Positions 46,101-64,000 of a stretch of DNA of 64,000 bases are shown here, piece after piece. Position 1 is the stretch's first letter. Each line of letters opens with the position of its first letter. The stretch comes from Phallusia mammillata. Taxonomy: Eukaryota. Below the pieces are notes generated by a model. That model had not been told where the DNA came from. It was given only the letters and a program-made list of their open reading frames with translations, and did not search any database. Location: the NCBI GenBank assembly GCA_965637545.1, contig OZ281495.1:25110001-25174000 (forward strand), given 5' to 3'. The translations under genes were made by a program, and so were the position numbers.

Positions 46101-46343
46101 ATTGTAAAAACCACTACCATAACGGAGGTCGAAAGTGCAACGGATACGTCTGAAGGTATACGCAGTATAACTTGCAGTTGTAATTTATGTTATTTCATTA
46201 TTTGATTTTTAGTGATTGTTCAATCTTTTTCTGCTATTTTTCTTCCTCCAGATAACCTAAGTGACTCGACGGACACAGAAATGAAGATTGTTCTCACCAA
46301 AAACATTATCGTCGTACGCGATGACGAAAGCAATGAGTACTAA
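31062..46343 (+). CDS. Gene A: membrane-anchored plakin-repeat (plectin/epiplakin-like) protein, about 41 exons, about 2,007 aa: N-terminal TM anchor, Ser/Glu/Pro-rich disordered region, 4 B-type PRDs, IF-binding linker, Thr/Ser-rich tail
   Basis: Phase-consistent GT-AG chain: 31062-31161, 32296-32384, 33039-33087, 34589-34680, 35008-36220, 36280-36360, 36440-36498, 36613-36758, PRD1 module 36914-38731, PRD2 module 38793-40850, PRD3 40916-42373, PRD4 42456-43802, 43876-43933, 44370-44576, (45327-45444 tentative), 45893-46022, 46101-46155, 46252-46343 (6024 nt). PRD motifs [51 protein letters not shown]; linker [22 protein letters not shown] identity is secure; attachment of the 5' TM exons is inferred from splice phase. 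Confidence 0.8.
31641..31692 (+). ncRNA. Type I hammerhead ribozyme motif, sense strand of gene A intron 1
   Basis: Stem I AGCTGCA(31641-47)/TGCAGCT(31686-92); core CTGATGA 31648-54; stem II GACC-ttgta-GGTC; GAAA 31668-71; stem III ACAGT-gtgc-ACTGT; GTC cleavage triplet ending at C31685. All core nucleotides present. Sits at the end of an about 110-bp repeat unit (31587-31696). Confidence 0.82.
36914..42373 (+). repeat. Triplicated multi-exon PRD module within gene A
   Basis: Modules start at 36914, 38793 and 40916. The first five exons are identical in size in all three (113, 141, 136, 134, 169 nt); modules 1 and 2 continue with 122, 53/68 and 95 nt, module 3 ends in an 82-nt exon. Protein sequence is highly similar; introns show no obvious similarity by eye. 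Confidence 0.9.
44034..44350 (+). repeat. 137-bp intronic tandem repeat, about 2.3 copies
   Basis: GGCAACAGTTTATG recurs at 44034, 44171 and 44308. Confidence 0.92.
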
Positions 46344-46491: not shown

Positions 46492-46497
46492 AATAAA
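46492..46497 (+). terminator. Probable polyadenylation signal of gene A
   Basis: AATAAA about 150 nt after the TAA at 46341-46343. Confidence 0.45.
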
Positions 46498-46796
46498 TGT
46501 ACTGCGCACAAGACATTGGGTGTTCAATTGTAACTGAAGCTTTAACACAGTCAGTGTGATATATTATAACGACTCGTCAAGCAAACTTAAGCTTCAAATA
46601 CACTACAAAGACCACTAATATACGGTTGTAGTGAACTGAGTCATGTTTTGGGTGCGCCACTTGTGCGTCACCCTCAAGTCTGAGCACACGAAGAAAGCAC
46701 CAGCATGGTCTGTTCATTCTCCATCCGCCAAGCCAGATGAGGAATTACTGCGCAATTTTGCACGGTCCTGTGCCTATTTACAGCTGAGACAGCAGG

Positions 46797-49700
46797 ATGA
46801 GATGGCCGCAAGATTTGGTGTTATTGCTTCAAGTGGGAATCGTAAACGCTTTAAGACCGACAGAAATTATTGTGATTAACGTATTCGGAAGTTTGGGTGG
46901 TATTTCACTAATTCTGATCGTAGCTCTTGTATGCAGCTATACGATTCAAAGTAAGTGTTTTTGTTTTTAAAGTTGTATCTGTATAACATCAAATTGTATC
47001 TTGTGAATAATCAAACGTTAGTGTTCCAAAACAAAAACAAATGAAAAAATTATTCATATCTTTTTAAAAAGGGTTATTTGTAAAACATTTTAAGTCCGGT
47101 GTTTTAATACGATCGGTTTAAAAAGATTTTAAAATTACTTCGTGTATTGTATTTCGGAGGAGAGAAACTTGTCAAAAGCTGAACCATTTTAGATTAGTAG
47201 TTACCTACTCACCAACCCTAGACCGCACCTTGGGGCTTTCACATTCGACAAAGCGTGGTATCATTCTATTAAAAGATAAGTTTGCGACAACTTTTGTGTA
47301 GTAGCTTGACAACCCTGTCACATTATTAAACCAATCCTGTAGCAACTATGCGATACAAAAGCACTTTACCGTCAAATTACGCAACAAAAACGGTTGTCTA
47401 AAATTGTGCAAATTTTATTTTGTCGTTTACAGAATGTAAAGATGGGCGTAGACGTGGTGAAAACGCTTTAACAGAGGTGGTTTCGGACGGCCGAAGACCA
47501 TACACTAGCACGGTATGTTTGTGTTGTTGGTCTGTGTACCTTCACGAGGGTTTGTTTTTGACAGCTGGTTTTCTCAGTCTAACCCACTCACAAAAGTTTC
47601 GTCATAGACATTCGTGCTTCATATTAAAGCTGCCTTGCAGTTCGTGTATTATCTGCGGAAAGTACCGGGGATAAATCTGAAAACCTTACAGATTCTTGTA
47701 CATACGTCATTTGCAGTTTACATGTGATTTTCAACTTTAAATTAAAATATAAACTTGGGCACATATTGGTAAAACGTTTTTGGCAGTGCACTCTGTTTCA
47801 ACCTATAAGGTCTTATCAGTGCAGCTAGTGACGCGAGATCGGCCGTATTGGCTAGCGTAAACTACCAAGACCCAACTGGAGTGCCATTGGATTGCCTCAC
47901 TAGCCAATACGTCCGATCTTCCGTCATCAGCTGCATTGATAAGACCTTACAGGTCAAAATGCAGCTTATCTTGGTGTTTTTACGTTTTGGCATACTTTGC
48001 ACAAAACTAATGCAGCCAATTTCGATTTGATGTATAATTTAATATTTCATTGCCATACAACACAAGCTTTCTAAATAGCTCTAGGTTTTCACTGAGTATT
48101 GTTTACCTGTTGTGTGAAACATAAACAAAATACTTTTCAAAGCTAAAGAATGTCGGTGCTGGGGAGGAAACATCTCTGGCGACCGTGTCATCACTTTCCG
48201 AAGATGCTGCAAATTCGAAATTACAACAAGAAAACGCTCCAAACCACCAACCAGTTTCGAAATCTCACGAATCGTCGCGCAGTCAAACCCCTGACATTGC
48301 TGACAACTATTCAAAAGATGATACACTGGTTTTTGAAGAGGAAAATACCAGCGAGGTACAACAAAATCTGAGTGAATGTATTTTGTACTACAAAAGTTGA
48401 CCACATTCCAAAATCAATCCAAATCACTATTGATGCCCCCAGTAACATTTTTGCGCGTTGTAAAAATCACGATAAAAACTGAGTAAAGGTTTCTGTACTG
48501 TATGTCCCCCTCAATTTGGCCACACTTCAAACAATCCTAATCACTCTCGGTGCCACAAGTGGAATTTTTCTGCTTTTTTCGTAATGAACATCTTTGCTCA
48601 TTTTTTTGAATGTTTTTCTAAACATTTATCTACAGCACACTTTACTTTTTTGTTCTGATTAAAACATGTCAACATTCAAATTAATGCAACATCACTTTAG
48701 TGTACGTGTAAATTGAAAAGTTAAATATTTGAAAGAACAAAAACAATCTAATTAGTTTGCTCGTTTATCTTTAAAAACTATCCAATCTAAAACAATGTTA
48801 ACATCCCATATAAAACACGTTTACAAGTGACTAAACTGGTGTACTGTAATTGTTTGCAGGGAACGGAGAATGGTAAATGTAATCACTACGAGAGACCCGA
48901 TGATACATTGCTAGAGAAAGAGCACGTGCAAAATGAACGAGTACAAAATAATGAGCAGCAGATACTCTCTGTGTCTCCGCTTTTCAGCAGCGATGTTACC
49001 AACTTGCAACTTGAACACGAAAAAGCGCTGCAAACAGCTCCCCAATCCAATGGTACACCGCCTAAAGCCCGAAACAACCTTCACCACTCTGCGGATCTTA
49101 ACTTAAACCTAGTCGACAGTGATACAGACTCTAGTGATGAGGAAGATTTTACACAGAACATACCCCAAGAGGTACCTAATTTTTTTAAGATAATTTCTTG
49201 CGGTGTAGCTGCAGCGCGTCATAAAGTCATGATCAACCAATTATGCCATCTAGTATTTTGCGCTCTATAACTTTCAACGTTGCGCAACTTTCCGGCTAGG
49301 TGATTGTTCCGTGCCATTGTGACGCTATATGTGCTTTCACCAAGCAAAATAAACTCAACTCAACTCAATTCAACAACTAGAAATACATAGCATGATAGCA
49401 CACCTTTACAATGTTATACTGGGTGTATAATTAATTTTAGTTTTAGCATGCTGGTCCAGTAAAAAACGCCCGCTAAAAACAGTAACACTTCGTGAAAGTG
49501 ACGAAAAATAGTTTTTAACTCTTTTGCGCCGAACGGTGACGACTATTTTAAATCTACATTTATTCTAATTGCAGACCAATAACCTACAACAGCTACAAGA
49601 TTCCTTGGTATTGGAAAATCTGCACTATAAAGATCCCGAGGTTGGTTGTTTAAAACACGATTTTGTCTCTTATCTAAATCCTGTTTGCAAGGATAACATT

Positions 49701-51098
49701 TTTGCCGTTAATTTTGGAATTTAAAATCGGCATGGATAGGCTTTCAATCGCTTTTTAATACTAATTCATAATTTTGTTGTACAGCCACAAGACAACAAAC
49801 CGGAGGTCAAACCAGCAGAGAGCAACCCGGGAAATCAACCTAATGAGCCACATGAACTGGAAAAGACCCACGATAAATTCCCAGAAACGATCCATGAGAA
49901 AAAACACAACGAACATGACGATACCTTACCCACAGGCTCAGTAGTTGATGCGCATGAAGAGAGAGAAAATCGCCCAGCTGAACAAGAACCAACAAAATTG
50001 TCGTCTGAAGAAGAAACTGACTTGGGATTTTCAAAGGTCCATGTTGATAAAAGTGAACATGAAAATCAACATGATGGAGATATGATTACAGTTACAGAGG
50101 TTCACGTACAGACAGAACAAAGTGATTTGTTGATGAGCGAATACTTACAAACATCAAGCGAACCACCCAATAGGGTCGATAACCTCCAGGAGGGTGATTC
50201 AATTTATAACGAAGATAACACGGAGGAACAAGAAACTGTGCAAAATGTAGGAGAAAATCAAGATGAGCATGTGGCCGCTATATCCACGCTCCAAGTTCCG
50301 GATGGATCGGCTAAACCAGATATGGACACTGATGTCGTCGAACCATCCAAGAAACGGGATGAAATAGTCTTTACATCAGGATGGGGAAAGCTGGTCAAAC
50401 TTCTCGATCTATTTAAATCTGGACTCGTATCAGAAGATACTGTCAAGAAACTGGAACACGGTGAAATAGAACAACGTAAAGTAGCCAGTGACCTTGGTCA
50501 ATACCTGAAAGGCGAAGAGCCAATAGGCGGACTTCTACTGGACAATGGCGATGTGATGTCACTTTTCGAAGCAAGCAACAAAGGCATCATTCGACGCGGT
50601 ACCGCTATCAGTCTTTTGGAGGCACAGGCAGCTACGGGTAGCATTATTAACCCCTTAAACGGTGACAAGATGAACGTAACTGAAGCCACACGCTGCAATT
50701 TAATCGGTGGACAGTTCGAATCAGTTTTAATTCGAGCCGAACGAGCGGTTTTGGGATTCAGAACAAAGTTTAGTGACAAGCCTTTTTCGCTTTTTGAAGC
50801 CATGCAACGGGGTTTGGTGGCAGAAAGTCGCGGGGTGCGACTTCTTGAGGCACAAATTGCCACTGGTGGTGTGATCGACCCACACGCCAACCACCGTCTG
50901 TCGATAGATGTCGCCTTTGAGCGAGGTTTGTTTGACCAAAGGTTGCATGACTTGCTGAGCTCCCCGGACAAGAAAGGCTTTTACGACCCGAACACGAACG
51001 AGAACTTAACCTACTTGGAACTTATGCAGCGGTGTACATTTGCCGCTGACACAGGGTTAAGGCTTTTGCCCTTTAAGCAGAGGAAGGCAAGGAGGTAG
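46797..51098 (+). CDS. Gene B: type I membrane protein with signal peptide, tiny ectodomain, TM, acidic low-complexity tail and one C-terminal plakin repeat domain, 6 exons, 712 aa
   Basis: Exons 46797-46950, 47433-47512, 48143-48355, 48860-49171, 49575-49640, 49785-51098; all GT-AG and phase-compatible (2139 nt). N-terminus MRWPQDLVLLLQVGIVNA-LRPTE-IIVINVFGSLGGISLILIVALVCSYTI-QKCKDGRRR. The last exon holds a complete PRD (about 50355-51075) without introns. Confidence 0.85.
47784..47970. mobile_element. Palindromic insertion made of two inverted, degenerate hammerhead-family units, in gene B intron 2
   Basis: Arms ACCTATAAGGTCTTATCAGTGCAGCT...TATTGGCTAG and CTAGCCAATA...CAGCTGCATTGATAAGACCTTACAGGT; catalytic cores mutated (CTGATAA and TTGATAA). 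Absent from the paralogous introns of gene C (about 54470 and 56270). Confidence 0.75.
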
Positions 51099-52066
51099 CT
51101 CTTCAGTTTAAATATATGTATTTTTTGTGCTAAATCTACATCACCTCATGGTCTTTTGTACATGTTTTTGCTTCAAACTAATGTCATTTTGTTCAATGCA
51201 TGTATGCTCTCGCAACTACAACCCCAAATAATTCAAGCCTTTTTCTTAGTGATTGTTCGAACCTTGGGCTATTATTACAAAAATATGTTCAAAATGATCA
51301 AACAATCATAAGCTATAATTTTGGCAATCAAATCATAAAATAAAACAAATAACTGAGATTTTGTTAACACATTGAGCCTAGTGCTGTTGTCATTCGAGGA
51401 TTTGTTTAAACATGATTTAACAAAAAATATGTTTTTTTTCGTTAAGTCGACTATTTTCCGTTTCTTTTCTTTCTTTTTCTTTTCTTTCTCTCTTCTGTTT
51501 GCATTAAGCTGAAAAAAGATTTTTATTTCCGATGAGGGTTATCATCACAGTTTAAACCAGGTTCCAGATGCCTTATCACTTTCCGGACATTTTTGCGCTT
51601 TTTTATTACTTTCAGTTAAAAATTTACTGACTTGTAATACAGTGTATAAATTGTTATGTTTGTTGCCTAGTACATTTTGGGTAATCAGTGTACAAGGTGT
51701 TGCAGTACATATTTAGACCTTCTCGTCACCAAACAGACGTTGCAGTACACCTGCTAGTCACTAAATAGGCTACTACTAATTTGTTTATATAACCTGCAGT
51801 TTGCATCTACAATTAGGTTTACATTCTTGAAACAAATTTTAAAACTAGATTAAAAAGCTTTCTATAATGTTACAAGTTATTAAAAAAAATTCCTGAAACG
51901 AAACAGTTCAAACATTCGTTAACATAGTTCCACAAGAAGTACAACGTAGTTACATCAAAGGTGTAGAAAACTACAAGTTAATCATGTGAGTTTGAATGTA
52001 GCTTTATGTCACTGTATTCTCCGCAACGAAATACGCCTCTTTAACTTTACATTTTAATGTCAACAG

Positions 52067-52500: not shown

Positions 52501-52954
52501 TGCAGGATGACGTATGAAAATTTAATTGTCAGTCATGTATAACTTGCTTTTAGTAAACTACTAACTTTTTTGTAGTTTTAATGCATAATTAGGTATGGTG
52601 TAGAGTTGTTAAATTCGTAGATTTTGTCAAATAAATCCTGGGTGTTTATCTATTATAATTGAAGTTGTAACACAGTGCGTGTGATTTATCGTTACAACTC
52701 TTTAAGCAAAGTTAAACTTTAAACACACTGCAAAAACCACCAATACAAGGTTTGAGTGAAGACAGTCATATTTGGGGTGCGCCGATGGTGTTACCATCAA
52801 GTCTGTAGCACCTGTAGCACCTGTAGCACCATCAAGTCTGTAGCACCCGAAAAAAGCACCAGCAATGGTCTGTTCATTCTTTATCGTTCAAGTCAGCTGA
52901 GGGATTTACTTCGCAATTTTGCACGATCGTATGCTCATTTACAGCTGAGATAGC

Positions 52955-55900
52955 ATGATGAGGTGGTCGCTAGTTTTAGTGTTATTGCTTCTAGTGGGAA
53001 ATGCAAACGCTTTACTTTTAGTGACATTGACAGAAGTTGTCGTATTCAGTGTATTTGCAAGTTTATTTATTCTTGCAGTAATTCTCATCGCAGTTCTTGT
53101 GTGCAGGTATATCAAGCAAAGTAAGTGTTTTTAAAATATACTTGTCACTACGTATCGCCAATTGTGCTCTTGTGTATAATCAAACGCAGTGGTTCTCAAA
53201 CTTTTTTATTGTCGGGGCCAAATGTGATTTTTTTAAGTGTGTAGGGAGCCGCAAAAAAACAAAACCTTGAGCAAATCGCTGAAGATTATTACTTTGAAAG
53301 CTAAAATAGCAATGTTTGGTGGTTTTCTGAGGTCTGGTGCGAGCCGCAGAATAAGTAGTTGGGAGCCGCATGCGGCCCCAAAAACCGAGTTTGAGAACCA
53401 CTGATCAAACGTATCCAAGAGAAAACAAATCAAACGTTTTGGATCGAAAACAAATAGAAGAAGATAATGTATTTTTGTTAAAAAAATGTGTTTGTTTGTA
53501 AAACATTTGATTTCCGGTGTTTAAAATGAGCCGTTTTAATGGCTTTTTAAAATTGCTTCGTGTAATGCATAATTTTGGACGAGAGAAACTTGTCATAAGC
53601 TGCACCAGAGTTGTAAGTTGTAAGGCTTCGGGTTTTTTTAAAATACGGGCTGGAATCGGACCTAATGTCAAACAGCCCTAAAACGTCTTGCTTTAAGGCC
53701 AATTCTCTATTGTGTTTGTTGTCTTGGTCTATCCTGAAGCTTTAATGAAAAGGCAGGTCAATCAAACTTTCGGGCCTAACCCGCGGGCTTCTCATTTCGG
53801 GTTCGGGCCGGGTTTCGGGCTTGTATTTTCGGGTTCTGACCGGGTTCGGTCTCCGATTTCAGGCCCGTTTACAACTCTAAGCTGAACTGTAATAGATTAG
53901 TAGTCTTCTACTCCCAAAACCTAAACTGCACCTTTGAATTGTAAAATTCGACAAAATGTGGTATTATTCTATTGAAAGACAAGTTTGCGACAACTCATTG
54001 TATAGTAGCTTGGTAACACTGTCACATTATTTATTCAACATTGTAGCAACTATGCGACACAACAACACCTTACCGTTAAATTTAAAAATGTGAAGTCAAT
54101 TTCCCATTTTTTTGTTTACAGAATGTGGAGATGGACTTGGGCGTGATGACGATGCTTTGAAAGGGGTGGTCACGGACGGCCGAAGGCCATACAGTATCAC
54201 GGTATGTTAATGTGTTGTTGGTCTGTGTACAGGGGGTTGCGCAGTCTAAACCACTCGTAGAAGTTTCGTCGCAGACATGTTTCCCTGCGTGCAAACAACC
54301 ATAAGAGGTCGGGAGTTTTTGTGCTTCGATAGGAATTCGGCGCTTTTTAATTGAAGCCGTCTCGCAGTTTGCAGCGGTTTCCGCGCCAAAGCGGAAAGTA
54401 CCGTGCCAAACATGGACACCTTATAGAAACCAGTTCACCGTTTGCACTTTGCATGTTAATTTTCAACCTAAAACGTTTGGGGGAAACTGGCACAAAAATA
54501 GTGCAGACATATTGAATTTATTAAAACACTTCTTTTCATGTAAAACCTATTATAAAGCTGTATACTACCAAGCCAGCAAAGCCACATAAATGCATAGGTT
54601 GTAGCTGAGCAGTTATGTTCTCACTGTATGTAACAAAACAGAACACTTTTTACAGCTAAAGAATTTCGATGCTGGGGAGGAAGCATCTCTGTCGTCTGTG
54701 TCGTCCCTTTCCGAAGACGCTGCAAATTCAAAATTACAACAAGAAAACGCTCCAAAAATCCAAATATATTCGAAACTTAACAAATCATCTCGCAGTCAAA
54801 TTCCTGACATTACCGACAATTATTCAAAAGATGAAACATTGATTTCAAAAGTGGATAACACTAGTGAGGTATGATAAAAACGAAGTAAATGTATTTTGTA
54901 ACAAAAGGCCATCTTTTTAAAATCAATTTAAATCACTCTCTATGCACTCAGTGGACTTTTCGTTTCTTTGCTTGTGACTTGCTGAATATACATCGGCGGC
55001 ACAGATAATACTTTATTTTGTTGAGAACATGTCAACACTCAATTGAACATCTGAAATAAAACAATGCCAAAATTCCCTAAAAAAAACAACGTTGCAACAA
55101 GTGATTTAACTCGTAAACTGTACTTGTTTGCAGCCAAAGGAAATCCATCATTATTATCACTACAAGACAGATCAACCTGAAGATTCAGCACAAAAAGTGC
55201 TCGAGAAAGAAAAAATGCAACATAAACAAATGCAAAGAAAAGGGCAACAGATATCCTCAGCGTCGCCGCTTCCCAGCAGCGATTTTCCCAACTTGGAGAT
55301 TGAACACAAAACAGCCCTGCAAACAGCACCTAAATCAAGTGGAAAGCTGAAACCTAGTTTAAACATCGACAGTGATACAGATTCGAGTGATGGGGAGAAT
55401 TTTATGCACAACAAACCTCCAGCGGTAAGCAAAATTTGCGTTTTAAAACGTCGACATTAATTTAATAAGTTTTCATAAGAAACTTAGAAGGCATTGACAT
55501 GACAGCTTTGCTTTACACTGTGGGCATCTCACATCCGTTTAGTTTTAGCATGTTGCACTCGATAAAGTACGAGTAAAATCTTTAAAAATAATTTTAATGT
55601 GCAAAAATTTAAGAAGATTAACGGTGGACGACAATTTAAAGTCTACATTTACTTTATTGCAGATCTACAACCAGCAACAGCGACAAAATCCTTCGGTTGT
55701 GAAACATTTGCATGATAAACATCCCGAGGTCGGTTGTTTAACATGTGGATAAACATTTTTGGTCGTTTAAATCCTGTTTACAAAGTATTTGCTTTTGTAC
55801 ACTTTTTATTATCTAACACAAAGAGACAAATCTAGCACTAAAACGTTTTTTTGTGTGTGTACAGCTAAAATACAACAGGGCAGAGATCAACACAGAGGGG

Positions 55901-58900
55901 GAAAACTCTGGAAAGCTGCCTATTGACAACGCTTTAACAGAGGTGGTCTCAGACGAGCAAAACCCAAAGATAACCACAGTATGTTCGTGTTGTTGTTGCG
56001 TGCTCTTTTAGCATGGTTTGTTTTTGACAGTTGGCTTGCTCAGTTGAAATCACTCGTAGTTTTCCCCACAAACATGTTTTCCTCAATGCAGCGTGCAGAC
56101 GACCGTAACGGTTCAGAAGTTTTTGTGCTTCGATAAGAATTCGGCACTTCCAAAATTAGAGTATGCTTGCAGTTTGTGTCGTGTTTCTGCGGAAAGAACC
56201 AAGGCAAACCTGGAAACCTTATAGAAGCCAGTTCATTGTTTCCAGTTTGGATGTTAATCTTTAACCTAAAACGTTTTGGGCAAAATTTGCACAAAAATAG
56301 TGTGGACATTTTGGATTTATCAAAAAAAAACGTTACATTTTAACACCATTATACAACTCCCATACTATATACCAAGGCAAAAGTGCATACAACTGTACAG
56401 GTTGTTTCATTGTATGGAACAAAACAAACAATTTTTCAGCTAAAGAATGTCGGTGCTGGTGAGGAAGCATTTCAGGCGACTGTGTCTTTACTTGCCGAAG
56501 ACGCTTCAAATTCGAAATTACAACAAGAAAACGCCCCAAACAACCAATGTGTTTTGAAATCTCACGAATTATCTCGCAGTCAAAACCCTGACTTCGCCAA
56601 AAACTATTCAAAAGATAACCTACTGGGTATTGAAAAGAAAAACACCAGTGATGAGGTACAATGAAAACCTAATGGATTTTATTGCACTAAAAAATTTCCC
56701 GCAACTTGGTCATACTTTAAAAGCAATTCTAATCAATCCCGATGCCCTCAGTGGAAATTTCTGCTTTGGTCGAAATGTACATCTTTGCTTGTGTTTTGCT
56801 AAACATACATCAACAGAATAGTTTATAACTTTAGTCTGATTAAAAGATTTCAACATTTTTGTTGTTGCAAGATCAATTAAGCTTGCCAGCTGCGTCCAAA
56901 TAATTGTTTAATTATTTTATGAAACACAATCACCCAAGCATTTTCGCCTATTTTTAAAAAATCATCTAAAATAAACGATGCTAACCTAACATCTAATATA
57001 AATAACGTTTTCACAAGTCACTTAACTGGCGAAATGTACTTATTTACAGCTGAAGGAAATCCATCATTATAGTGACTACAAGATAAATCAACCGGAAGAT
57101 TCAGCACAAAAAGTGCTTGAGAAAGAACACATGCATAGTGAACAAATACAAAGAAAAAATCAACATGTATCCTCGGCGTTGCCGCTCTTCAGCAGCGATC
57201 TTCCCAACTTGGAGATTGAACACAAAACAGCCCTGAAAACAGCATCTAAATCAAGTGGAAAGTTGAATCCTAATTTAAACCTCGACGGTGATACAGATTC
57301 AAGTGATGAGGAGAATTTTATATACAACAAACCCAAAGCGGTAAGGAGAATTTGCGTTTTAAAATGCCAACATACATTATAATCTGTTTTGATAAATAAA
57401 GGCATTGACATAATAGCTTTACAGCCAGGAGAAAGCCACATATCATCACGGTATGTTTGTGTTGTTGTTGTGCGCTCCTTCAGCAGGGTTTGTTTTTGAC
57501 AGTTGGCTTGCTCAGTCAAACCACTCGCAAAAGTTTCCACACAGACATGTTTTCCTCAATGCAGCAGGTAAACGACCGTAATCGGTCACTAATTTGTTTG
57601 CTCCGATAGGAATTCGACACTTGCAAAATTAAAGTATGCTTGCAGTTTGTTTCAAGTTTCTGCGGGGTACCGAGGCAAACCTGGAAAACATTATAGAAGC
57701 CAGTTTATCGTTTTGCAGTTTATATGTCTTAACCTAAAACGTTTTGAGCAAACTTTGCGCAAAAATCGTGTGGACATATTAAATTTTAAAAAAAGAAACA
57801 TTACATTTATCAACATAACACCCTTTATACAGCTGTACACTTTATACCACGGCAAATGTACATAGGTAGTAAATCAGCTCTTTGTGTTCTCATTGTATGA
57901 AACAAAACGAACATTTTTTAAAGTTAAAGAATTTTGATGCCGAAGAGGATGCATCTCTGGCGACTGTGTCTTTACTTTCCGAAGACGCTGCAAATTCGAA
58001 ATTACAACAGGAAAACGTTCCAAACAACCAACATGTTTCGAAATCTCACGAATCATCTCGCAGTCAAACCCCTGACATTGCCGACAACTATTCAAACGAT
58101 GATGCATTGGATTTTGAAAAGAAAAACGCTAGCAAGGTAAAATAAAAAATGAGTAAATATTTTTATCGTTTGCAGTTTACATGTTAATCTTTTACCAATG
58201 AACAAAAATATTGTGGACATATTGGAATTATAAAAAAAACATTACAATTTATCAACATAACACCCAATATACAGCTCTACACTATACACAAAGGAACATA
58301 CAGGTGTTAGGTCGTAAATAGGCTATTTATGTTCTCATTGTATGGATCAAAACCAACAATTTTTTAAAGCTAAAGAAATTCGATGCTGGGGAGGAAGCTT
58401 CTCTGGCGTCTGTGTCTACACTTTCGGGAAACGCTGCAAATTCGAAATTACAACAAGAAAAATCTCCCAACAACCAACGTGATTCGAAATCTCACGAATC
58501 ATCTAGTAGTCAAATCCCTGACATTGACGACAACTATTCAAAAGACGACCTAGTGGTTATTGAAAAGGAAAACACTAGCAAGGTGAAATAAAAACTGAGT
58601 AAATATTTTTGCACTACAAAATTTCTTACAACTTGGTCACACTTCAAAAACAATCCTAATCAATCTCGATGCCCTTAGTGGAATTTTCGTGCTTTGGTCG
58701 GAATGTACATTTTTGCTTATGTTAAAAGTGCAATTTGATGTAAGATTACCTAAATGTAGCAGTTGCGTCCAAATTGTTGAAATATTTTATGAAACAAAAA
58801 ACAACCAAGTACTTCGGCCTTTTTTGATAAATAATTTAAAATAACACATTGCGACTGTACGTGTTTGCAGGCAAAGGAAATTCATCATTATTACCACTAC

Positions 58901-61900
58901 CAGATAGATCAACCTGAGGATTCAGCACAAAAAGTGCTTGAGAAAGAACACAAGCATAATGAACAAATACAAGGAAAGGGGCAGCAGCTTTCCTGTGAAT
59001 CGCCGCTTCCCAGCAACGATTTTTCGAACTTGAAGCTTGAAGACAAAACAGCGTTGGAATCAGCACCTAAACCAAGTGGAAAGTTGAATCCCAATTTAAG
59101 CCATGACGGTGATACAGATTCAAGTAATGAGGAGAATTTTATATACAACAAACCCAAAGCGGTAAGGAGAATTTGCGTTTTAAAATGCCAACATACATTA
59201 TAATCTGTTTTGATAAATAAAGGCATTGACATAATAGCTTTACAGCCAGGAGAAAGCCACATATCATCACGGTATGTTTGTGTTGTTGTTGTGCGCTCCT
59301 TCAGCAGGGTTTGTTTTTGACAGTTGGCTTGCTCAGTCAAACCACTCGCAAAAGTTTCCACACAGACATGTTTTCCTCAATGCAGCAGGTAAACGACCGT
59401 AATCGGTCACTAATTTGTTTGCTCCGATAGGAATTCGACACTTGCAAAATTAAAGTATGCTTGCAGTTTGTTTCAAGTTTCTGCGGGGTACCGAGGCAAA
59501 CCTGGAAAACATTATAGAAGCCAGTTTATCGTTTTGCAGTTTATATGTCTTAACCTAAAACGTTTTGAGCAAACTTTGCGCAAAAATCGTGTGGACATAT
59601 TAAATTTTAAAAAAAGAAACATTACATTTATCAACATAACACCCTTTATACAGCTGTACACTTTATACCACGGCAAATGTACATAGGTAGTAAATCAGCT
59701 CTTTGTGTTCTCATTGTATGAAACAAAACGAACATTTTTTAAAGTTAAAGAATTTTGATGCCGAAGAGGATGCATCTCTGGCGACTGTGTCTTTACTTTC
59801 CGAAGACGCTGCAAATTCGAAATTACAACAGGAAAACGTTCCAAACAACCAACATGTTTCGAAATCTCACGAATCATCTCGCAGTCAAACCCCTGACATT
59901 GCCGACAACTATTCAAACGATGATGCATTGGATTTTGAAAAGAAAAACGCTAGCAAGGTAAAATAAAAAATGAGTAAATATTTTTATCGTTTGCAGTTTA
60001 CATGTTAATCTTTTACCAATGAACAAAAATATTGTGGACATATTGGAATTATAAAAAAAACATTACAATTTATCAACATAACACCCAATATACAGCTCTA
60101 CACTATACACAAAGGAACATACAGGTGTTAGGTCGTAAATAGGCTATTTATGTTCTCATTGTATGGATCAAAACCAACAATTTTTTAAAGCTAAAGAAAT
60201 TCGATGCTGGGGAGGAAGCTTCTCTGGCGTCTGTGTCTACACTTTCGGGAAACGCTGCAAATTCGAAATTACAACAAGAAAAATCTCCCAACAACCAACG
60301 TGATTCGAAATCTCACGAATCATCTAGTAGTCAAATCCCTGACATTGACGACAACTATTCAAAAGACGACCTAGTGGTTATTGAAAAGGAAAACACTAGC
60401 AAGGTGAAATAAAAACTGAGTAAATATTTTTGCACTACAAAATTTCTTACAACTTGGTCACACTTCAAAAACAATCCTAATCAATCTCGATGCCCTTAGT
60501 GGAATTTTCGTGCTTTGGTCGGAATGTACATTTTTGCTTATGTTAAAAGTGCAATTTGATGTAAGATTACCTAAATGTAGCAGTTGCGTCCAAATTGTTG
60601 AAATATTTTATGAAACAAAAAACAACCAAGTACTTCGGCCTTTTTTGATAAATAATTTAAAATAACACATTGCGACTGTACGTGTTTGCAGGCAAAGGAA
60701 ATTCATCATTATTACCACTACCAGATAGATCAACCTGAGGATTCAGCACAAAAAGTGCTTGAGAAAGAACACAAGCATAATGAACAAATACAAGGAAAGG
60801 GGCAGCAGCTTTCCTGTGAATCGCCGCTTCCCAGCAACGATTTTTCGAACTTGAAGCTTGAAGACAAAACAGCGTTGGAATCAGCACCTAAACCAAGTGG
60901 AAAGTTGAATCCCAATTTAAGCCATGACGGTGATACAGATTCAAGTAATGAGGAGAATTTTATGGACAACAAATCCCAACCGGTAAGCAAATTTTGCGTT
61001 TTATAATGCCAACATTGGTATAACCTGTTTTAATAAATGAAGGCATTGACATGACAGCTTAACAGACGGGCAAAATCCACACATTACCGCAGTATGTTTG
61101 TGTTGTTGGTGCCCGTTCCTGCAGCAGGGTTTGTTTTTGACAGTTGGCTTGCTCAGTCCAAACCACTCGCAAAAGTTTCCACACGGACATGTTTTCCTCA
61201 ATGCAGCAGGTAAACGACCGTAATCGGTCACTAATTTGTTTGCTCCGATAGGAATTCGACACTTGCAAAATTAAAGGATGCTTATAGTTTGCAGCGGTTT
61301 GCGGAAAGTACCGAGTCAAGCCTGGAAACCTTATAGAATCCGGTTTATCGTTTGCAGTTTATATGTAAATCTTAACCTAAAACGTTTTGGGCAAACTTTG
61401 CGCAAAAATAGTGTGGACATATTGAATTTATAAATAAAAAAACGTTACATTTATCAACATAACACCCTTTATACAGCTGTACACTTTATACCACGGCAAA
61501 GGTACATAGGTATTAAATCAGCTCTTTGTGTTCTCATTGTATGAAACAAAACAAACATTTTTTAAAGTTAAAGAATTTTGATGCCGAGGAGGAAGCATCT
61601 CTGGCGACTGTATCTTTACTTTCCGAAGACGCTGCAAATTCGAAATTACAACAAGAAAACATTCCAAACAACCAACATGTTTCGAAATCTCACGAATCAT
61701 CTCGCAGTCAAACCCCTGACATTGCCGACAACTATTCAAACGATGATGCATTGGATTTTGAAAAGAAAAACGCTAGCAAGGTAAAATAAAAAATGAGTAA
61801 ATATTTTTATCGTTTGCAGTTTACATGTTAATCTTTTACTAATGAACAAAAATAGTGTGGACATATTGGAATTATAAAAAAAACATTATATTTTATTAAC

Positions 61901-64000
61901 ATAGCACCCAATATACAGCTCTACACTATATACAAAGGAACATACAGGTGTTAGGTCGTAAATAGGCTATTTATGTTCTCATTGTATGGATCAAAACCAA
62001 CAATTTTTTAAAGCTAAAGAAATTCGATGCTGGGGAGGAAGCTTCTCTGGCGTCTGTGTCTACACTTTCGGGAAACGCTGCAAATTCGAAATTACAACAA
62101 GAAAAATCTCCCAACAACCAACGTGATTCGAAATCTCACGAATCATCTAGTAGTCAAATCCCTGACATTGACGACAACTATTCAAAAGACGACCTAGTGG
62201 TTATTGAAAAGGAAAACACTAGCAAGGTGAAATAAAAACTGAGTAAATATTTTTGCACTACAAAATTTCTTACAACTTGGTCACACTTCAAAAACAATCC
62301 TAATCAATCTCGATGCCCTTAGTGGAATTTTCGTGCTTTGGTCGGAATGTACATTTTTGCTTATGTTAAAAGTGCAATTTGATGTAAGATTACCTAAATG
62401 TAGCAGTTGCGTCCAAATTGTTGAAATATTTTATGAAACAAAAAACAACCAAGTACTTCGGCCTTTTTTGATAAATAATTTAAAATAACACATTGCGACT
62501 GTACGTGTTTGCAGGCAAAGGAAATTCATCATTATTACCACTACCAGATAGATCAACCTGAGGATTCAGCACAAAAAGTGCTTGAGAAAGAACACAAGCA
62601 TAATGAACAAATACAAGGAAAGGGGCAGCAGCTTTCCTGTGAATCGCCGCTTCCCAGCAACGATTTTTCGAACTTGAAGCTTGAAGACAAAACAGCGTTG
62701 GAATCAGCACCTAAACCAAGTGGAAAGTTGAATCCCAATTTAAGCCATGACGGTGATACAGATTCAAGTAATGAGGAGAATTTTATGGACAACAAATCCC
62801 AACCGGTAAGCAAATTTTGCGTTTTATAATGCCAACATTGGTATAACCTGTTTTAATAAATGAAGGCATTGACATGACAGTTTAACAGACGGGCAAAATC
62901 CACACATTACCGCAGTATGTTTGTGTTGTTGGTGCCCGTTCCTGCAGCAGGGTTTGTTTTTGACAGTTGGCTTGCTCAGTCCAAACCACTCGCAAAAGTT
63001 TCCACACAGACATGTTTTCCTCAATGCAGCAGGTAAACGACCGTAATCGGTCACTAATTTGTTTGCTCCGATAGGAATTCGACACTTGCAAAATTAAAGG
63101 ATGCTTATAGTTTGCAGCGGTTTGCGGAAAGTACCGAGTCAAGCCTGGAAACCTTATAGAATCCGGTTTATCGTTTGCAGTTTATATGTAAATCTTAACC
63201 TAAAACGTTTTGGGCAAACTTTGCGCAAAAATAGTGTGGACATATTGAATTTATAAATAAAAAAACGTTACATTTATCAACATAACACCCTTTATACAGC
63301 TGTACACTTTATACCACGGCAAAGGTACATAGGTATTAAATCAGCTCTTTGTGTTCTCATTGTATGAAACAAAACAAACATTTTTTAAAGTTAAAGAATT
63401 TTGATGCCGAGGAGGAAGCATCTCTGGCGACTGTACCTTTACTTTCCGAAGACGCTAAAAATTCGAAATTACAACAAAAAAACGCTCCAAACAACCAAAG
63501 TGTTTCGAAAACTCACGAATCGTCGCGCAGTCGAATCCCTGACATTGACGACAATTATTCAAAAGATGACCTAGTGGTTATTGAAAAGGAAAACGCCAGC
63601 AAGGTAAAAAAAACTGAGTGAATATTTTTGCACTACAAAAGTCCCCACAATTTGGCGACACTTTAAAAACAATCCTACTTACTCTTGGTCCCCCAGTAAA
63701 ATTTTCGTTCTTTCATCAGAATGCACATCTATGCTTATGTTAAATGTGCCATTTCATACAAGATCACTTAAGCGTAAAAGCTGCGTTCAAATTGTTGAAA
63801 TAATGTTTTTTTAAAAGTTTTAAAACCAAAAACCAAGTATTCCGAGTATTTTTGTCAAATCATTTAAAGTAAAAGTATGCTAACTGTACTTGTTTGCAGC
63901 CAAAGGAAATCCATCATTATTATCACTACAAGATAGATCAACCTAAATGTTACATCTTATTTGCCAGTAATTGCAGATTTCTATTGATTCCCGCATTTCC
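52955..64000 (+). CDS. Gene C (3'-incomplete): paralog of gene B with signal peptide + TM and a tandemly expanded Ser/Glu/Asn-rich tail; no PRD within the window
   Basis: Exons 52955-53120 (MMRWSLVLVLLLLVGNANA-LLLVTLTE-VVVFSVFASLFILAVILIAVLVC-RYIKQ), 54122-54201, 54656-54868, 55134-55424, 55663-55728, 55865-55978, 56440-56655, 57050-57340, then 57924-58136, 58370-58582, 58871-59161, 59745-59957, 60191-60403, 60692-60982, 61568-61780, 62014-62226, 62515-62805, 63391-63603, 63900-?. Open for 1267 codons up to 63603. Confidence 0.75.
53187..53403. mobile_element. hAT-Charlie-type MITE, 217 bp, in gene C intron 1
   Basis: TIRs CAGTGGTTCTCAAAC / GTTTGAGAACCACTG; exact 8-bp TSD ATCAAACG (53179-53186 and 53404-53411); single empty-site copy ATAATCAAACGTT at about 47007-47019 in gene B. 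Confidence 0.95.
53606..53879 (-). mobile_element. hAT MITE of the same family as 13155-13563, in gene C intron 1
   Basis: Ends CAGAGTTGTAA...TTACAACTCTA; the right part is the reverse complement of the 13155 left end; TSD AGCTGCAC/AGCTGAAC (1 mismatch); empty site AAAGCTGAACC at about 47176-47186 in gene B. Confidence 0.88.
57341..63900 (+). repeat. Tandem array of about 3.6 near-identical 1821-1823-bp units, each full unit with three phase-0 exons (213, 213, 291 nt)
   Basis: Homologous exon starts at 57924, 59745 (+1821), 61568 (+1823) and 63391 (+1823); introns are also nearly identical between units. Confidence 0.95.

What the first reader, a model, noticed from the sequence alone, without database searches (positions are those of the whole stretch)
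46797..51098. Gene B: signal peptide, about 5-residue ectodomain, TM, long acidic spacer and one terminal PRD
Six canonical exons give an intact 712-aa frame. Juxtamembrane Cys residues (VCSYTIQKC) are candidate palmitoylation sites and are followed by a basic cluster. This is the minimal form of a membrane-tethered IF-binding module and the cleanest test case.
Basis: partly seen in the sequence, partly recalled or inferred. Interest (0 to 1): 0.75.

Follow-up and report, generated by a model that had tools for sequence, protein, structure and literature searches.

The report
Membrane-anchored plakin-repeat protein, sea squirt
This sea-squirt gene encodes a single-pass membrane protein with almost no outside part, whose long acidic inner tail ends in one desmoplakin-type filament-binding domain; this design is conserved in other sea squirts, is described in no paper I found, and could tie intermediate filaments directly to a membrane.

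Summary
Six GT-AG exons (46797-51098, + strand) give an intact 712-aa frame: a signal-peptide-like start, about 5 outside residues, a 27-residue membrane helix, Cys plus basic juxtamembrane residues, a 387-residue acidic spacer (net -58) and one C-terminal plakin repeat domain (PRD).

The PRD is B-type: Pfam Plectin E 9e-37, AlphaFold pLDDT 94, TM 0.93 to desmoplakin PRD-B.

No RNA data exist for this species, so the exon joins rest on comparison:
- Exons and a 160-nt upstream block are 71-75% identical to the downstream duplicate (gene C); introns are about 50%.
- dN/dS is 0.26-0.66.
- Exon 1 is significantly similar to the N-terminus of a 776-aa Ciona model, and Clavelina has the same layout.
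- Clavelina also shares the phase-1 intron after the helix, the intronless PRD exon and the upstream multi-PRD neighbour.

Caveats:
- Newer Ciona RefSeq models split anchor and PRD, and Clavelina has an anchor-less isoform.
- Gene B lacks the orthologues' PDZ-like domain.
- Its PRD is the most divergent of its clade.
- Filament binding is inferred; 3 of 6 envoplakin groove residues are basic.

The scan already noted this family on neighbouring DNA (gene A) and on another piece of this genome.

The parts
46637..46796 (+). Conserved upstream block (promoter / 5' UTR candidate). It includes an AG acceptor-like site at 46782-46783 and an in-frame TGA at 46785-46787.
   Evidence: 74% identical to the stretch upstream of gene C exon 1, while the introns are about 50%. 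Gene A's AATAAA lies at 46492.
46797..46950 (+). Exon 1 (phase 1 at its end), covering the start codon, signal peptide, ectodomain and membrane helix.
   Evidence: The only significant hits of the Ciona P0123 N-terminus in the whole window are this exon (E 6.8e-7) and gene C exon 1 (E 1.4e-7).
46797..46850 (+). Signal-peptide-like segment, residues 1-18 (R2, h-region L7-V16, V-N-A before the predicted cut).
   Evidence: Read from the sequence using the (-3,-1) rule. The same pattern occurs in gene C, P0123, P0049, P0076, P0084 and P0085. SignalP was not available.
46851..46865 (+). Predicted ectodomain of 5 residues (LRPTE).
   Evidence: Orthologues have 8-11 residues here.
46866..46946 (+). 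Membrane helix, residues 24-50, with the conserved F-G-S-L-G motif and C46.
   Evidence: 27 uncharged residues, mean KD 2.28. The motif F-[AG]-[ST]-[LMI]-G is shared across clades I and II.
47433..47512 (+). Exon 2: juxtamembrane K-C-K-D-G-R-R-R basic/Cys cluster and a conserved DGRRPY motif.
   Evidence: 75% nt identity to gene C exon 2, dN/dS 0.60.
48143..48355 (+). Exon 3: 71-codon phase 0-0 acidic/Ser-rich cassette.
   Evidence: Eight intact copies with AG/GT borders in gene C were compared; they are 70-79% aa identical with dN/dS 0.26-0.50. A ninth, more divergent hit lies at 56395-56652.
48860..49171 (+). Exon 4: 104-codon phase 0-0 acidic cassette.
   Evidence: Five homologous copies in gene C, dN/dS 0.36-0.50.
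49575..49640 (+). Exon 5: 22 codons, phase 0-0. This is the least supported exon.
   Evidence: Only the open frame and AG/GT borders support it. There is no homologue in gene C or elsewhere, and the donor GTTGGT is weak.
49785..50354 (+). Exon 6, first part: the rest of the acidic spacer (to residue 465).
   Evidence: Residues 459-520 (the end of the spacer running into the start of the PRD) resemble the stretches before the PRDs of gene A.
50355..51098 (+). Exon 6, second part: one B-type plakin repeat domain (residues 466-712) and the stop codon. It has no intron.
   Evidence: Pfam Plectin E 8.7e-37. PDB desmoplakin PRD-B 1LM7 E 8e-61. AF2 pLDDT 94.3. Foldseek 1LM7 TM 0.93, rmsd 1.7.
51339..51344 (+). 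AATAAA polyadenylation signal, 241 nt after the stop.

Best explanation
Gene B is a working gene of a tunicate-specific family of membrane-anchored plakin-repeat proteins.

Proposed mechanism:
- The first 18 residues act as a cleavable signal peptide, and the following 27-residue helix stops transfer. The mature protein is then type I, with about 5 residues outside and everything else in the cytosol. This is inferred from the h-region length, the -3/-1 rule and the basic cluster after the helix.
- C46 and C53 may be palmitoylated, and the K/R cluster may sit on acidic lipids (inferred).
- A roughly 390-residue acidic, probably disordered tether made of phase-0 cassette exons holds one desmoplakin PRD-B-type domain at its end.
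- That domain most likely binds the rod of cytoplasmic intermediate filaments (tunicates have keratin-like and other IFs) through its basic groove. The protein would then tie filaments to a membrane, most likely the plasma membrane, without plakin domain, rod, plakoglobin or plakophilin.

What is shown and what is inferred:
- Shown here: the frame, the domain, the fold, and homology and constraint on the anchor exon.
- Inferred: cleavage, which membrane, acylation, and filament binding.
For: - Intact six-exon frame.
- PRD by Pfam, PDB sequence search, AF2 and Foldseek.
- Exons 1 and 2 (with the 160-nt upstream block) are 71-75% identical to gene C while introns are about 50%; exon 3 is 70-79% aa identical to its gene C copies. 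dN/dS is 0.26-0.66 for exons 1-4.
- A 93%-identical second copy or allele of the PRD differs mostly at third codon positions (14 of 20; 4 aa changes).
- Exon 1 is homologous to the N-terminus of the Ciona 776-aa model P0123, which runs on into the orthologous PRD.
- Clavelina P0049 and RefSeq P0125, from two assemblies and two annotation pipelines, have signal peptide, 8-residue ectodomain, helix, CC and KKRKKK, a phase-1 intron in a Lys codon right after the helix as in gene B, an intronless PRD exon, and a multi-PRD gene just upstream.
- The PRD tree puts gene B with P0043, P0049, P0034, P0039, P0047 and P0048 inside a tunicate-only clade (SH-aLRT 99).
- P0079 is a 1673-nt mRNA-like contig encoding signal peptide, helix, spacer and PRD in one frame.
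- Every family member with a complete N-terminus has K/R after its helix.
- Tunicates have cytoplasmic IFs including one keratin pair (PMC5603733, citing Karabinos 2004).
- PRD grooves bind vimentin and keratin (PMC4782060).
Against: - No RNA evidence in this species.
- Newer Ciona RefSeq models split the locus into an anchor-PDZ protein (XP_018667155.1) and a PRD-only protein with another first exon (XP_026689896.1). Clavelina has an anchor-less isoform, P0127.
- Only K116, R141 and R192 (PRD numbering) keep the charge of envoplakin's six groove residues. R1914, one of the two most important, aligns with Pro.
- Gene B's PRD departs from 8 of 71 near-invariant columns, two of them invariant in all 31 other sequences.
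- The PDZ-like domain of the orthologues is absent.
- No signal-peptide or topology predictor was available.
- No anchor exon was found within 10 kb upstream of the PRD exon in three metagenome relatives.
Confidence: 0.7

Rival explanations
1. The anchor exons and the PRD exon are mainly used in separate transcripts. An internal promoter or alternative first exon would give a soluble PRD protein, and the membrane-anchored full-length form would be rare or absent.
For: - Current Ciona RefSeq models split the orthologous locus into a 361-aa anchor protein and a 402-aa PRD protein with its own first exon.
- Clavelina has a 498-aa isoform without anchor.
- There is no RNA for this species.
Against: - In gene B the anchor exons are followed only by spacer cassettes with no domain of their own, so an anchor-only product would have no obvious function, yet exons 1-4 are under constraint.
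- Two Clavelina annotations and an older Ciona model join anchor and PRD.
- Clade II relatives include a single mRNA-like contig that holds both.
- No alternative first exon like those of Ciona or Clavelina was found in the window.
Confidence: 0.2
2. The first hydrophobic stretch is not cleaved. The protein would then sit in the membrane as a helical hairpin or with a re-entrant N-terminus, and the PRD would still be cytosolic.
For: - Only 5-7 residues separate the two hydrophobic stretches.
- In gene C the gap is itself hydrophobic: 20 uncharged residues before T-E.
- No predictor was run.
Against: - The first h-region has only 10 residues in gene B, too short to span a bilayer.
- Small residues at -1 and -3 are kept in gene B, gene C, Ciona, Clavelina and three of the four clade II forms aligned (P0076, P0084, P0085), although the rest of the segment varies.
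- From my own knowledge: FcR gamma (5-residue ectodomain) and CD3 zeta (9 residues) are cleaved in the same layout.
Confidence: 0.15
3. Gene B is a young duplicate drifting towards loss, or towards a use other than filament binding. Its PRD would no longer bind intermediate filaments.
For: - It has the longest end branch in clade I (0.38).
- It departs from 8 of 71 near-invariant columns, against 0-4 in its orthologues.
- The PDZ-like domain is lost.
- The acidic DDT loop is shortened.
Against: - All six exons are open and their splice sites intact.
- dN/dS is below 1.
- 63 of 71 conserved columns are kept and the fold is predicted with pLDDT 94.
- The variant copy differs mainly at synonymous sites.
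Confidence: 0.12

Closest known systems
Desmoplakin PRD-B (PDB 1LM7, 5DZZ)
   Same: The C-terminal domain is the same fold and subtype: phmmer E 8e-61, about 43% identity, TM 0.93, rmsd 1.7 A. It also has the extra N-terminal hairpin (the S-G-W-x-x-x-V-K-L region) that PRD-C and envoplakin lack.
   Different: Desmoplakin is cytosolic. It has a plakin domain, a coiled-coil rod, three PRDs, a linker and a Gly-Ser-Arg tail, and it reaches the membrane through plakoglobin and plakophilin. Gene B has none of these and carries its own membrane helix.
Orthologue models: Ciona intestinalis UPI000180C52B (776 aa; later split into XP_018667155.1 'pinin-like' and XP_026689896.1 'desmoplakin-like') and Clavelina lepadiformis XP_076800506.1 / CAK8694512.1 (672 aa)
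   Same: - Signal peptide, 8-residue ectodomain, helix with the F-[AG]-[ST]-[LI]-G motif, basic cluster, acidic/Ser-rich spacer and one B-type PRD.
- Same PRD clade.
- Same intron phase after the helix (Clavelina).
- Same position downstream of a multi-PRD gene.
   Different: They carry a PDZ-like domain after the helix (below Pfam's cut-off in Clavelina: 19.3 against 23.2 bits). Gene B has none. Their names are automatic; I found no paper on them.
Gene A of this window and other tunicate membrane-anchored PRD proteins (clade II XP_002129905.1, clade III XP_078482518.1)
   Same: One N-terminal membrane anchor, an acidic spacer and a cytosolic PRD, often with Cys and K/R after the helix.
   Different: - Gene A has an uncleaved N-terminal signal anchor and four intron-split PRDs.
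- Clade III has a signal anchor with CxxC.
- Clade II genes switch between two alternative anchor exons.
Plectin / BPAG1e at hemidesmosomes, VAB-10A in C. elegans, and nesprin-3 with plectin at the nucleus
   Same: The proposed job is the same: coupling intermediate filaments to a membrane through PRDs.
   Different: In those systems the PRD protein is soluble and docks on a separate membrane protein (integrin beta4, BP180, LET-805/MUP-4, nesprin-3). Here anchor and PRD would be one polypeptide. This comparison rests on my own knowledge and was not tested here.
Short-ectodomain transmembrane adaptors (FcR gamma, CD3 zeta, DAP10/DAP12, LAT)
   Same: Layout only: a signal peptide or none, 4-10 outside residues, one helix, juxtamembrane Cys, and a long cytosolic tail that does the work. 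A clade II relative gives a sub-threshold Pfam DAP10 hit (18.9 against 22.9 bits).
   Different: There is no sequence homology for gene B, no ITAM or YxxM motifs, and no charged residue in the helix.

Membership tests
Plakin repeat domain (PRD) proteins | Pfam Plectin repeats (PF00681) above the gathering score | tested here: met
   125.1 bits against a cut-off of 20.5, E 8.7e-37.
Plakin repeat domain (PRD) proteins | Globular PRD fold of 4.5 repeats | tested here: met
   AF2 pLDDT 94.3, pTM 0.90. Foldseek top hits are 5DZZ and 1LM7 (TM 0.93), then 4QMD and 1LM5.
Plakin repeat domain (PRD) proteins | Basic groove residues needed for vimentin binding in envoplakin (R1876, R1895, K1901, R1914, R1952, K1994) | tested here: inconclusive
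   They align with K, V, R, P, R and L, so 3 of 6 are basic. Desmoplakin PRD-B has 4 of 6. K153 and R138 lie next to two of the lost positions.
Plakin family in the strict sense (desmoplakin, plectin, BPAG1, envoplakin) | N-terminal plakin domain (spectrin repeats plus SH3) | tested here: not met
   Pfam finds nothing in exons 1, 3 and 4 or in the first part of exon 6. Exons 2 and 5 are too short to hold one.
Plakin family in the strict sense (desmoplakin, plectin, BPAG1, envoplakin) | Central coiled-coil rod for dimerisation | not tested
   No coiled-coil predictor was run. The spacer is acidic (net -58) with 25 Pro and 19% hydrophobic residues, which argues against a rod.
Tunicate membrane-anchored PRD proteins, clade I orthogroup | Homologous N-terminal module: signal peptide, ectodomain of at most 11 residues, helix with F-[AG]-[ST]-x-G, basic cluster | tested here: met
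   Alignment A2. tblastn of the Ciona P0123 N-terminus hits only exon 1 of genes B and C (E 7e-7 and 1e-7).
Tunicate membrane-anchored PRD proteins, clade I orthogroup | PRD groups with the Ciona and Clavelina clade I PRDs | tested here: met
   Tree: clade of 7 rows with SH-aLRT 91, inside a tunicate-only clade with SH-aLRT 99. No starred branch holds gene B within the clade.
Tunicate membrane-anchored PRD proteins, clade I orthogroup | Gene structure and neighbourhood: phase-1 intron after the helix, intronless spacer+PRD last exon, location downstream of a multi-PRD gene | tested here: met
   Clavelina L001. Intronless last exons also occur in L002-L007. The C. savignyi model P0006 fuses the two neighbouring genes.
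Tunicate membrane-anchored PRD proteins, clade I orthogroup | PDZ-like domain between helix and spacer | tested here: not met
   No Pfam hit in gene B's exons. tblastn of P0049 residues 100-200 finds nothing in the window.
Type I single-pass membrane proteins | Cleaved signal peptide and N-out/C-in topology | not testable with these tools
   Only rule-based reading was possible: 10-residue h-region, V and A at -3/-1, 5 K/R after the helix. SignalP and DeepTMHMM were not available.

The most novel reading that the evidence does not exclude
The anchor may be more than a tether. Its helix keeps a small-residue face (F-[AG]-[ST]-x-G) across tunicate clades I and II, and the layout is that of DAP10 / FcR gamma-type partner chains. 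These proteins could therefore pair in the membrane with an adhesion receptor and serve as its filament-coupling subunit. That would make them a tunicate alternative to the desmosome and hemidesmosome plaque, built from one polypeptide instead of plakoglobin, plakophilin and a plakin.
Probability: 0.15. Interest if true: 0.85.

Novelty: new variant of a known kind. Interest (0 to 1): 0.6.

Why it matters
In every studied system, from vertebrate desmosomes and hemidesmosomes to worm fibrous organelles and the nuclear envelope, plakin repeat domains reach membranes through adaptor proteins. A PRD fused to its own membrane helix, conserved across ascidian orders in the sister group of vertebrates, would be the simplest known membrane-to-intermediate-filament link. 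It bears on how filament anchorage was organised before desmosomes arose. It also offers a small, tractable construct for testing what a single PRD can do in cells. Finally, it shows that databases name these proteins misleadingly ('desmoplakin-like', 'pinin-like').

Tried and rejected
- **RNA evidence.** The run search gave only two DNA runs that hold the locus. The two RNA-like runs of the same species label that I laid (X3, X8, of twelve listed, all with next to none of its words) hold only intron repeats, so no splice joint could be seen.
- **Anchor exons in relatives.** I scanned 10 kb upstream of the PRD exon in three metagenome relatives (L003, L005, L006) and 3 kb in L007. There were no convincing candidates. 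This proves little, because introns may be longer there.
- **More N-terminal homologues.** A word search with Clavelina P0049 residues 1-200 returned only itself.
- **Hidden exons in gene B.** I looked for a hidden PDZ exon and for alternative first exons like those of Ciona and Clavelina. None was found.
- **Ciona genome locus.** XP_026689896.1 is not in the contig index.
- **Literature.** Seven searches found no paper on membrane-anchored PRD proteins. One Ciona paper mentions a plectin/desmoplakin/epiplakin-like gene enriched in papilla cells, without describing its architecture.
- **Rfam.** Nothing over the locus.
- **Readings rejected.** That B is part of gene A: gene A has its own stop and an AATAAA at 46492, and a signal peptide must be N-terminal. 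That the intronless PRD is a recent retrocopy: the same intronless last exon exists in Clavelina and in four other relatives.
- **Not used.** The large representative-protein search was not run, because the claim does not rest on absence of relatives.
Full report
**1. What is in the sequence**

The window is animal DNA with GT-AG introns, and the nearest proteins are all from tunicates. All have AG/GT borders, and joined they give 2139 nt, that is 712 codons and TAG.

The ATG is preceded by an in-frame TGA (46785-46787). Gene A upstream has its own stop (46341-46343) and an AATAAA at 46492. Gene B has an AATAAA at 51339. B is therefore a separate unit.

**2. The protein**

| Residues | Feature |
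|---|---|
| 1-18 | Signal peptide shape: R2, a 10-residue h-region, V and A at -3/-1 |
| 19-23 | LRPTE, the predicted ectodomain |
| 24-50 | 27 uncharged hydrophobic residues |
| after 50 | C46 and C53, and 5 K/R within 15 residues |
| 79-465 | Spacer with 86 D+E against 28 K+R (net -58, pI 4.4), 19% hydrophobic residues |
| 466-712 | One plakin repeat domain (PRD) |

Evidence for the PRD:
- Pfam Plectin, 125 bits.
- Best solved relatives are desmoplakin PRD-A/B (5DZZ) and PRD-B (1LM7, E 8e-61). C-type PRDs and envoplakin score far lower.
- An AlphaFold model built on 32 aligned PRDs has pLDDT 94.3. It superposes on 1LM7 with TM 0.93 and rmsd 1.7 A.

**3. Is the gene model real?**

No transcript data could be found:
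- The two runs that hold the locus cover introns and exons evenly and show no splice joints, so they are DNA.
- Two RNA-like runs of the same species label hold only two intron repeats.

The case therefore rests on comparison.

(a) A tandem duplicate, gene C, starts at 52955.
- Against it, the 160 nt upstream of the ATG are 74% identical, exon 1 is 71% and exon 2 is 75%.
- The start of intron 1 is 48% identical and its end 52%.
- The only indel in exon 1 is 9 nt.
- dN/dS is 0.66 for exon 1, 0.60 for exon 2, 0.26-0.50 for exon 3 against eight gene C copies, and 0.36-0.50 for exon 4 against five copies.

(b) A 247-nt variant contig over 50567-50813, plus a short further contig, is either a second copy or an allele. 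Together they differ at 20 sites, 14 of them third codon positions, with 4 amino-acid changes.

(c) Exon 5 has no support beyond its open frame and borders. Skipping it would give 690 aa in frame.

**4. Relatives**

A tree of 43 PRDs gives a tunicate-only clade (SH-aLRT 99) with three main groups. Gene B falls in clade I with Ciona XP_026689896.1 (P0043), Clavelina P0049 and four sequences that are terminal-exon ORF calls from metagenome assemblies. Those four show that the intronless spacer+PRD exon is widespread.

Clavelina P0049 / RefSeq XP_076800506.1:
- The two models come from two assemblies and two annotation pipelines and differ at 14 residues.
- The protein has a signal peptide, an 8-residue ectodomain, a helix, CC, KKRKKK, a PDZ-like domain, a spacer and a PRD.
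- Its first exon ends in phase 1 inside a Lys codon right after the helix, exactly as in gene B.
- Its PRD exon is intronless.
- A multi-PRD, intron-split gene lies just upstream, like gene A here.

Ciona:
- The C. savignyi Ensembl model P0006 fuses the same two neighbouring genes.
- The cluster of P0043 contains an older 776-aa model (UPI000180C52B, P0123). It runs from a signal peptide, an 8-residue ectodomain and a helix through a PDZ-like domain and spacer into the same PRD.
- The N-terminal 70 residues of P0123, searched against all six frames of the window, hit only exon 1 of gene C (E 1.4e-7) and of gene B (E 6.8e-7).
- The alignment shows shared V-L-L-L-x-V-G, x-x-A before the cut, T-E at the helix start, and F-G-[ST]-L-G in the helix.

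Clade II relatives have the same module. One of them, P0079, is a 1673-nt contig with 5' and 3' untranslated ends and one uninterrupted frame from signal peptide to PRD, which looks like an mRNA.

The anchor exon is therefore an old, homologous part of this gene lineage.

**5. Caveats**

- Newer Ciona RefSeq models split the locus into a 361-aa anchor+PDZ protein ('pinin-like') and a 402-aa PRD protein with another first exon. Clavelina has a 498-aa isoform without anchor. Soluble PRD forms may therefore exist beside, or instead of, the anchored one.
- Gene B lacks the PDZ-like domain.
- Its PRD departs from 8 of 71 near-invariant columns, against 0-4 in its orthologues. Two of those columns are invariant in all 31 other sequences.
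- Of the six basic groove residues that envoplakin needs for vimentin binding (PMC4782060), gene B keeps K, R and R, and has V, P and L at the other three. Desmoplakin PRD-B keeps four.
- Filament binding is thus plausible but not shown. Tunicates do have the ligands: five cytoplasmic IF genes including one keratin pair (PMC5603733, citing Karabinos 2004).

**6. How it most likely works**

- ER targeting and cleavage of the signal peptide give a type I protein with only about 5 residues outside.
- The long helix, the Cys residues and the polybasic stretch suggest the plasma membrane.
- The acidic tether lets the single PRD reach filaments.
- All phase-0 cassette exons could be skipped or repeated without breaking the frame, and gene C has done exactly that.

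Every step after 'the frame encodes this architecture' is inference.

**7. Known or new**

Databases hold automatic names only. Seven literature searches found no description of a PRD with its own membrane anchor.

This scan had already noted the same idea for gene A of this window (s1-368966) and for a gene on another piece of this genome (s1-410951). Gene B adds three things:
- the variant with a cleavable signal peptide and a minimal ectodomain;
- its orthology to the Ciona and Clavelina genes;
- the warning that current RefSeq models disagree on whether anchor and PRD are one product.

Noticed in passing
window 52955-63603: Gene C is a tandem duplicate of gene B. It has homologous exons 1 and 2 (52955-53120, 54122-54204), followed by nine hits to the exon-3 cassette and five copies of the exon-4 cassette. 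The eight exon-3 copies I examined are open and have AG/GT borders. The copies at about 57924-62226 repeat with a period near 1821 nt and are nearly identical.
   Followed up: partly
window 46637-46796 and 52798-52957: The 160 nt upstream of the start codons of genes B and C are as conserved as the exons. Both keep the sequence tttacag|CTGAGA 13 nt before the ATG, with an in-frame TGA. This may be a spliced-leader trans-splice acceptor or a core promoter.
   Followed up: no
window 47796-47959 (intron 2): A MITE-like palindrome: 60-nt arms, 85% complementary, 44 nt apart. Its word depth is about 150-200 times that of the flanks in both DNA runs. One contig replaces 109 nt of it with 26 other letters.
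   Followed up: partly
window 49311-49372 (intron 4): A very high-copy repeat, about 500 times the depth of its flanks. It also occurs inside contigs of the two RNA-like runs. Rfam finds nothing there.
   Followed up: partly
window 50567-50866: The DNA runs hold a second version of this PRD stretch at about full depth (18 differences in 247 nt, and 2 more up to position 50834). It is probably a paralogue, perhaps the PRD of gene C beyond the window end, rather than an allele.
   Followed up: partly
P0128 / P0070 (Ciona) and P0130 / P0082 (Clavelina): Clade II genes have two alternative first exons in both species. One encodes a signal peptide, a short ectodomain and a helix. The other encodes a different hydrophobic N-terminus (F-W-S-x-T-x-G-x-G-x-L-x-F-F-x-D-L...). 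This suggests one PRD protein is sent to two different membrane settings.
   Followed up: no
Ciona intestinalis XP_018667155.1 and XP_026689896.1 (P0122, P0043): RefSeq names the two halves of one older 776-aa model 'pinin-like' and 'desmoplakin-like'.
   Followed up: partly
L001 23979-24282 (Clavelina, minus strand): A third PRD gene (1045-aa product) lies tail-to-tail about 10 kb downstream of the gene B orthologue, with LRR genes in between.
   Followed up: no
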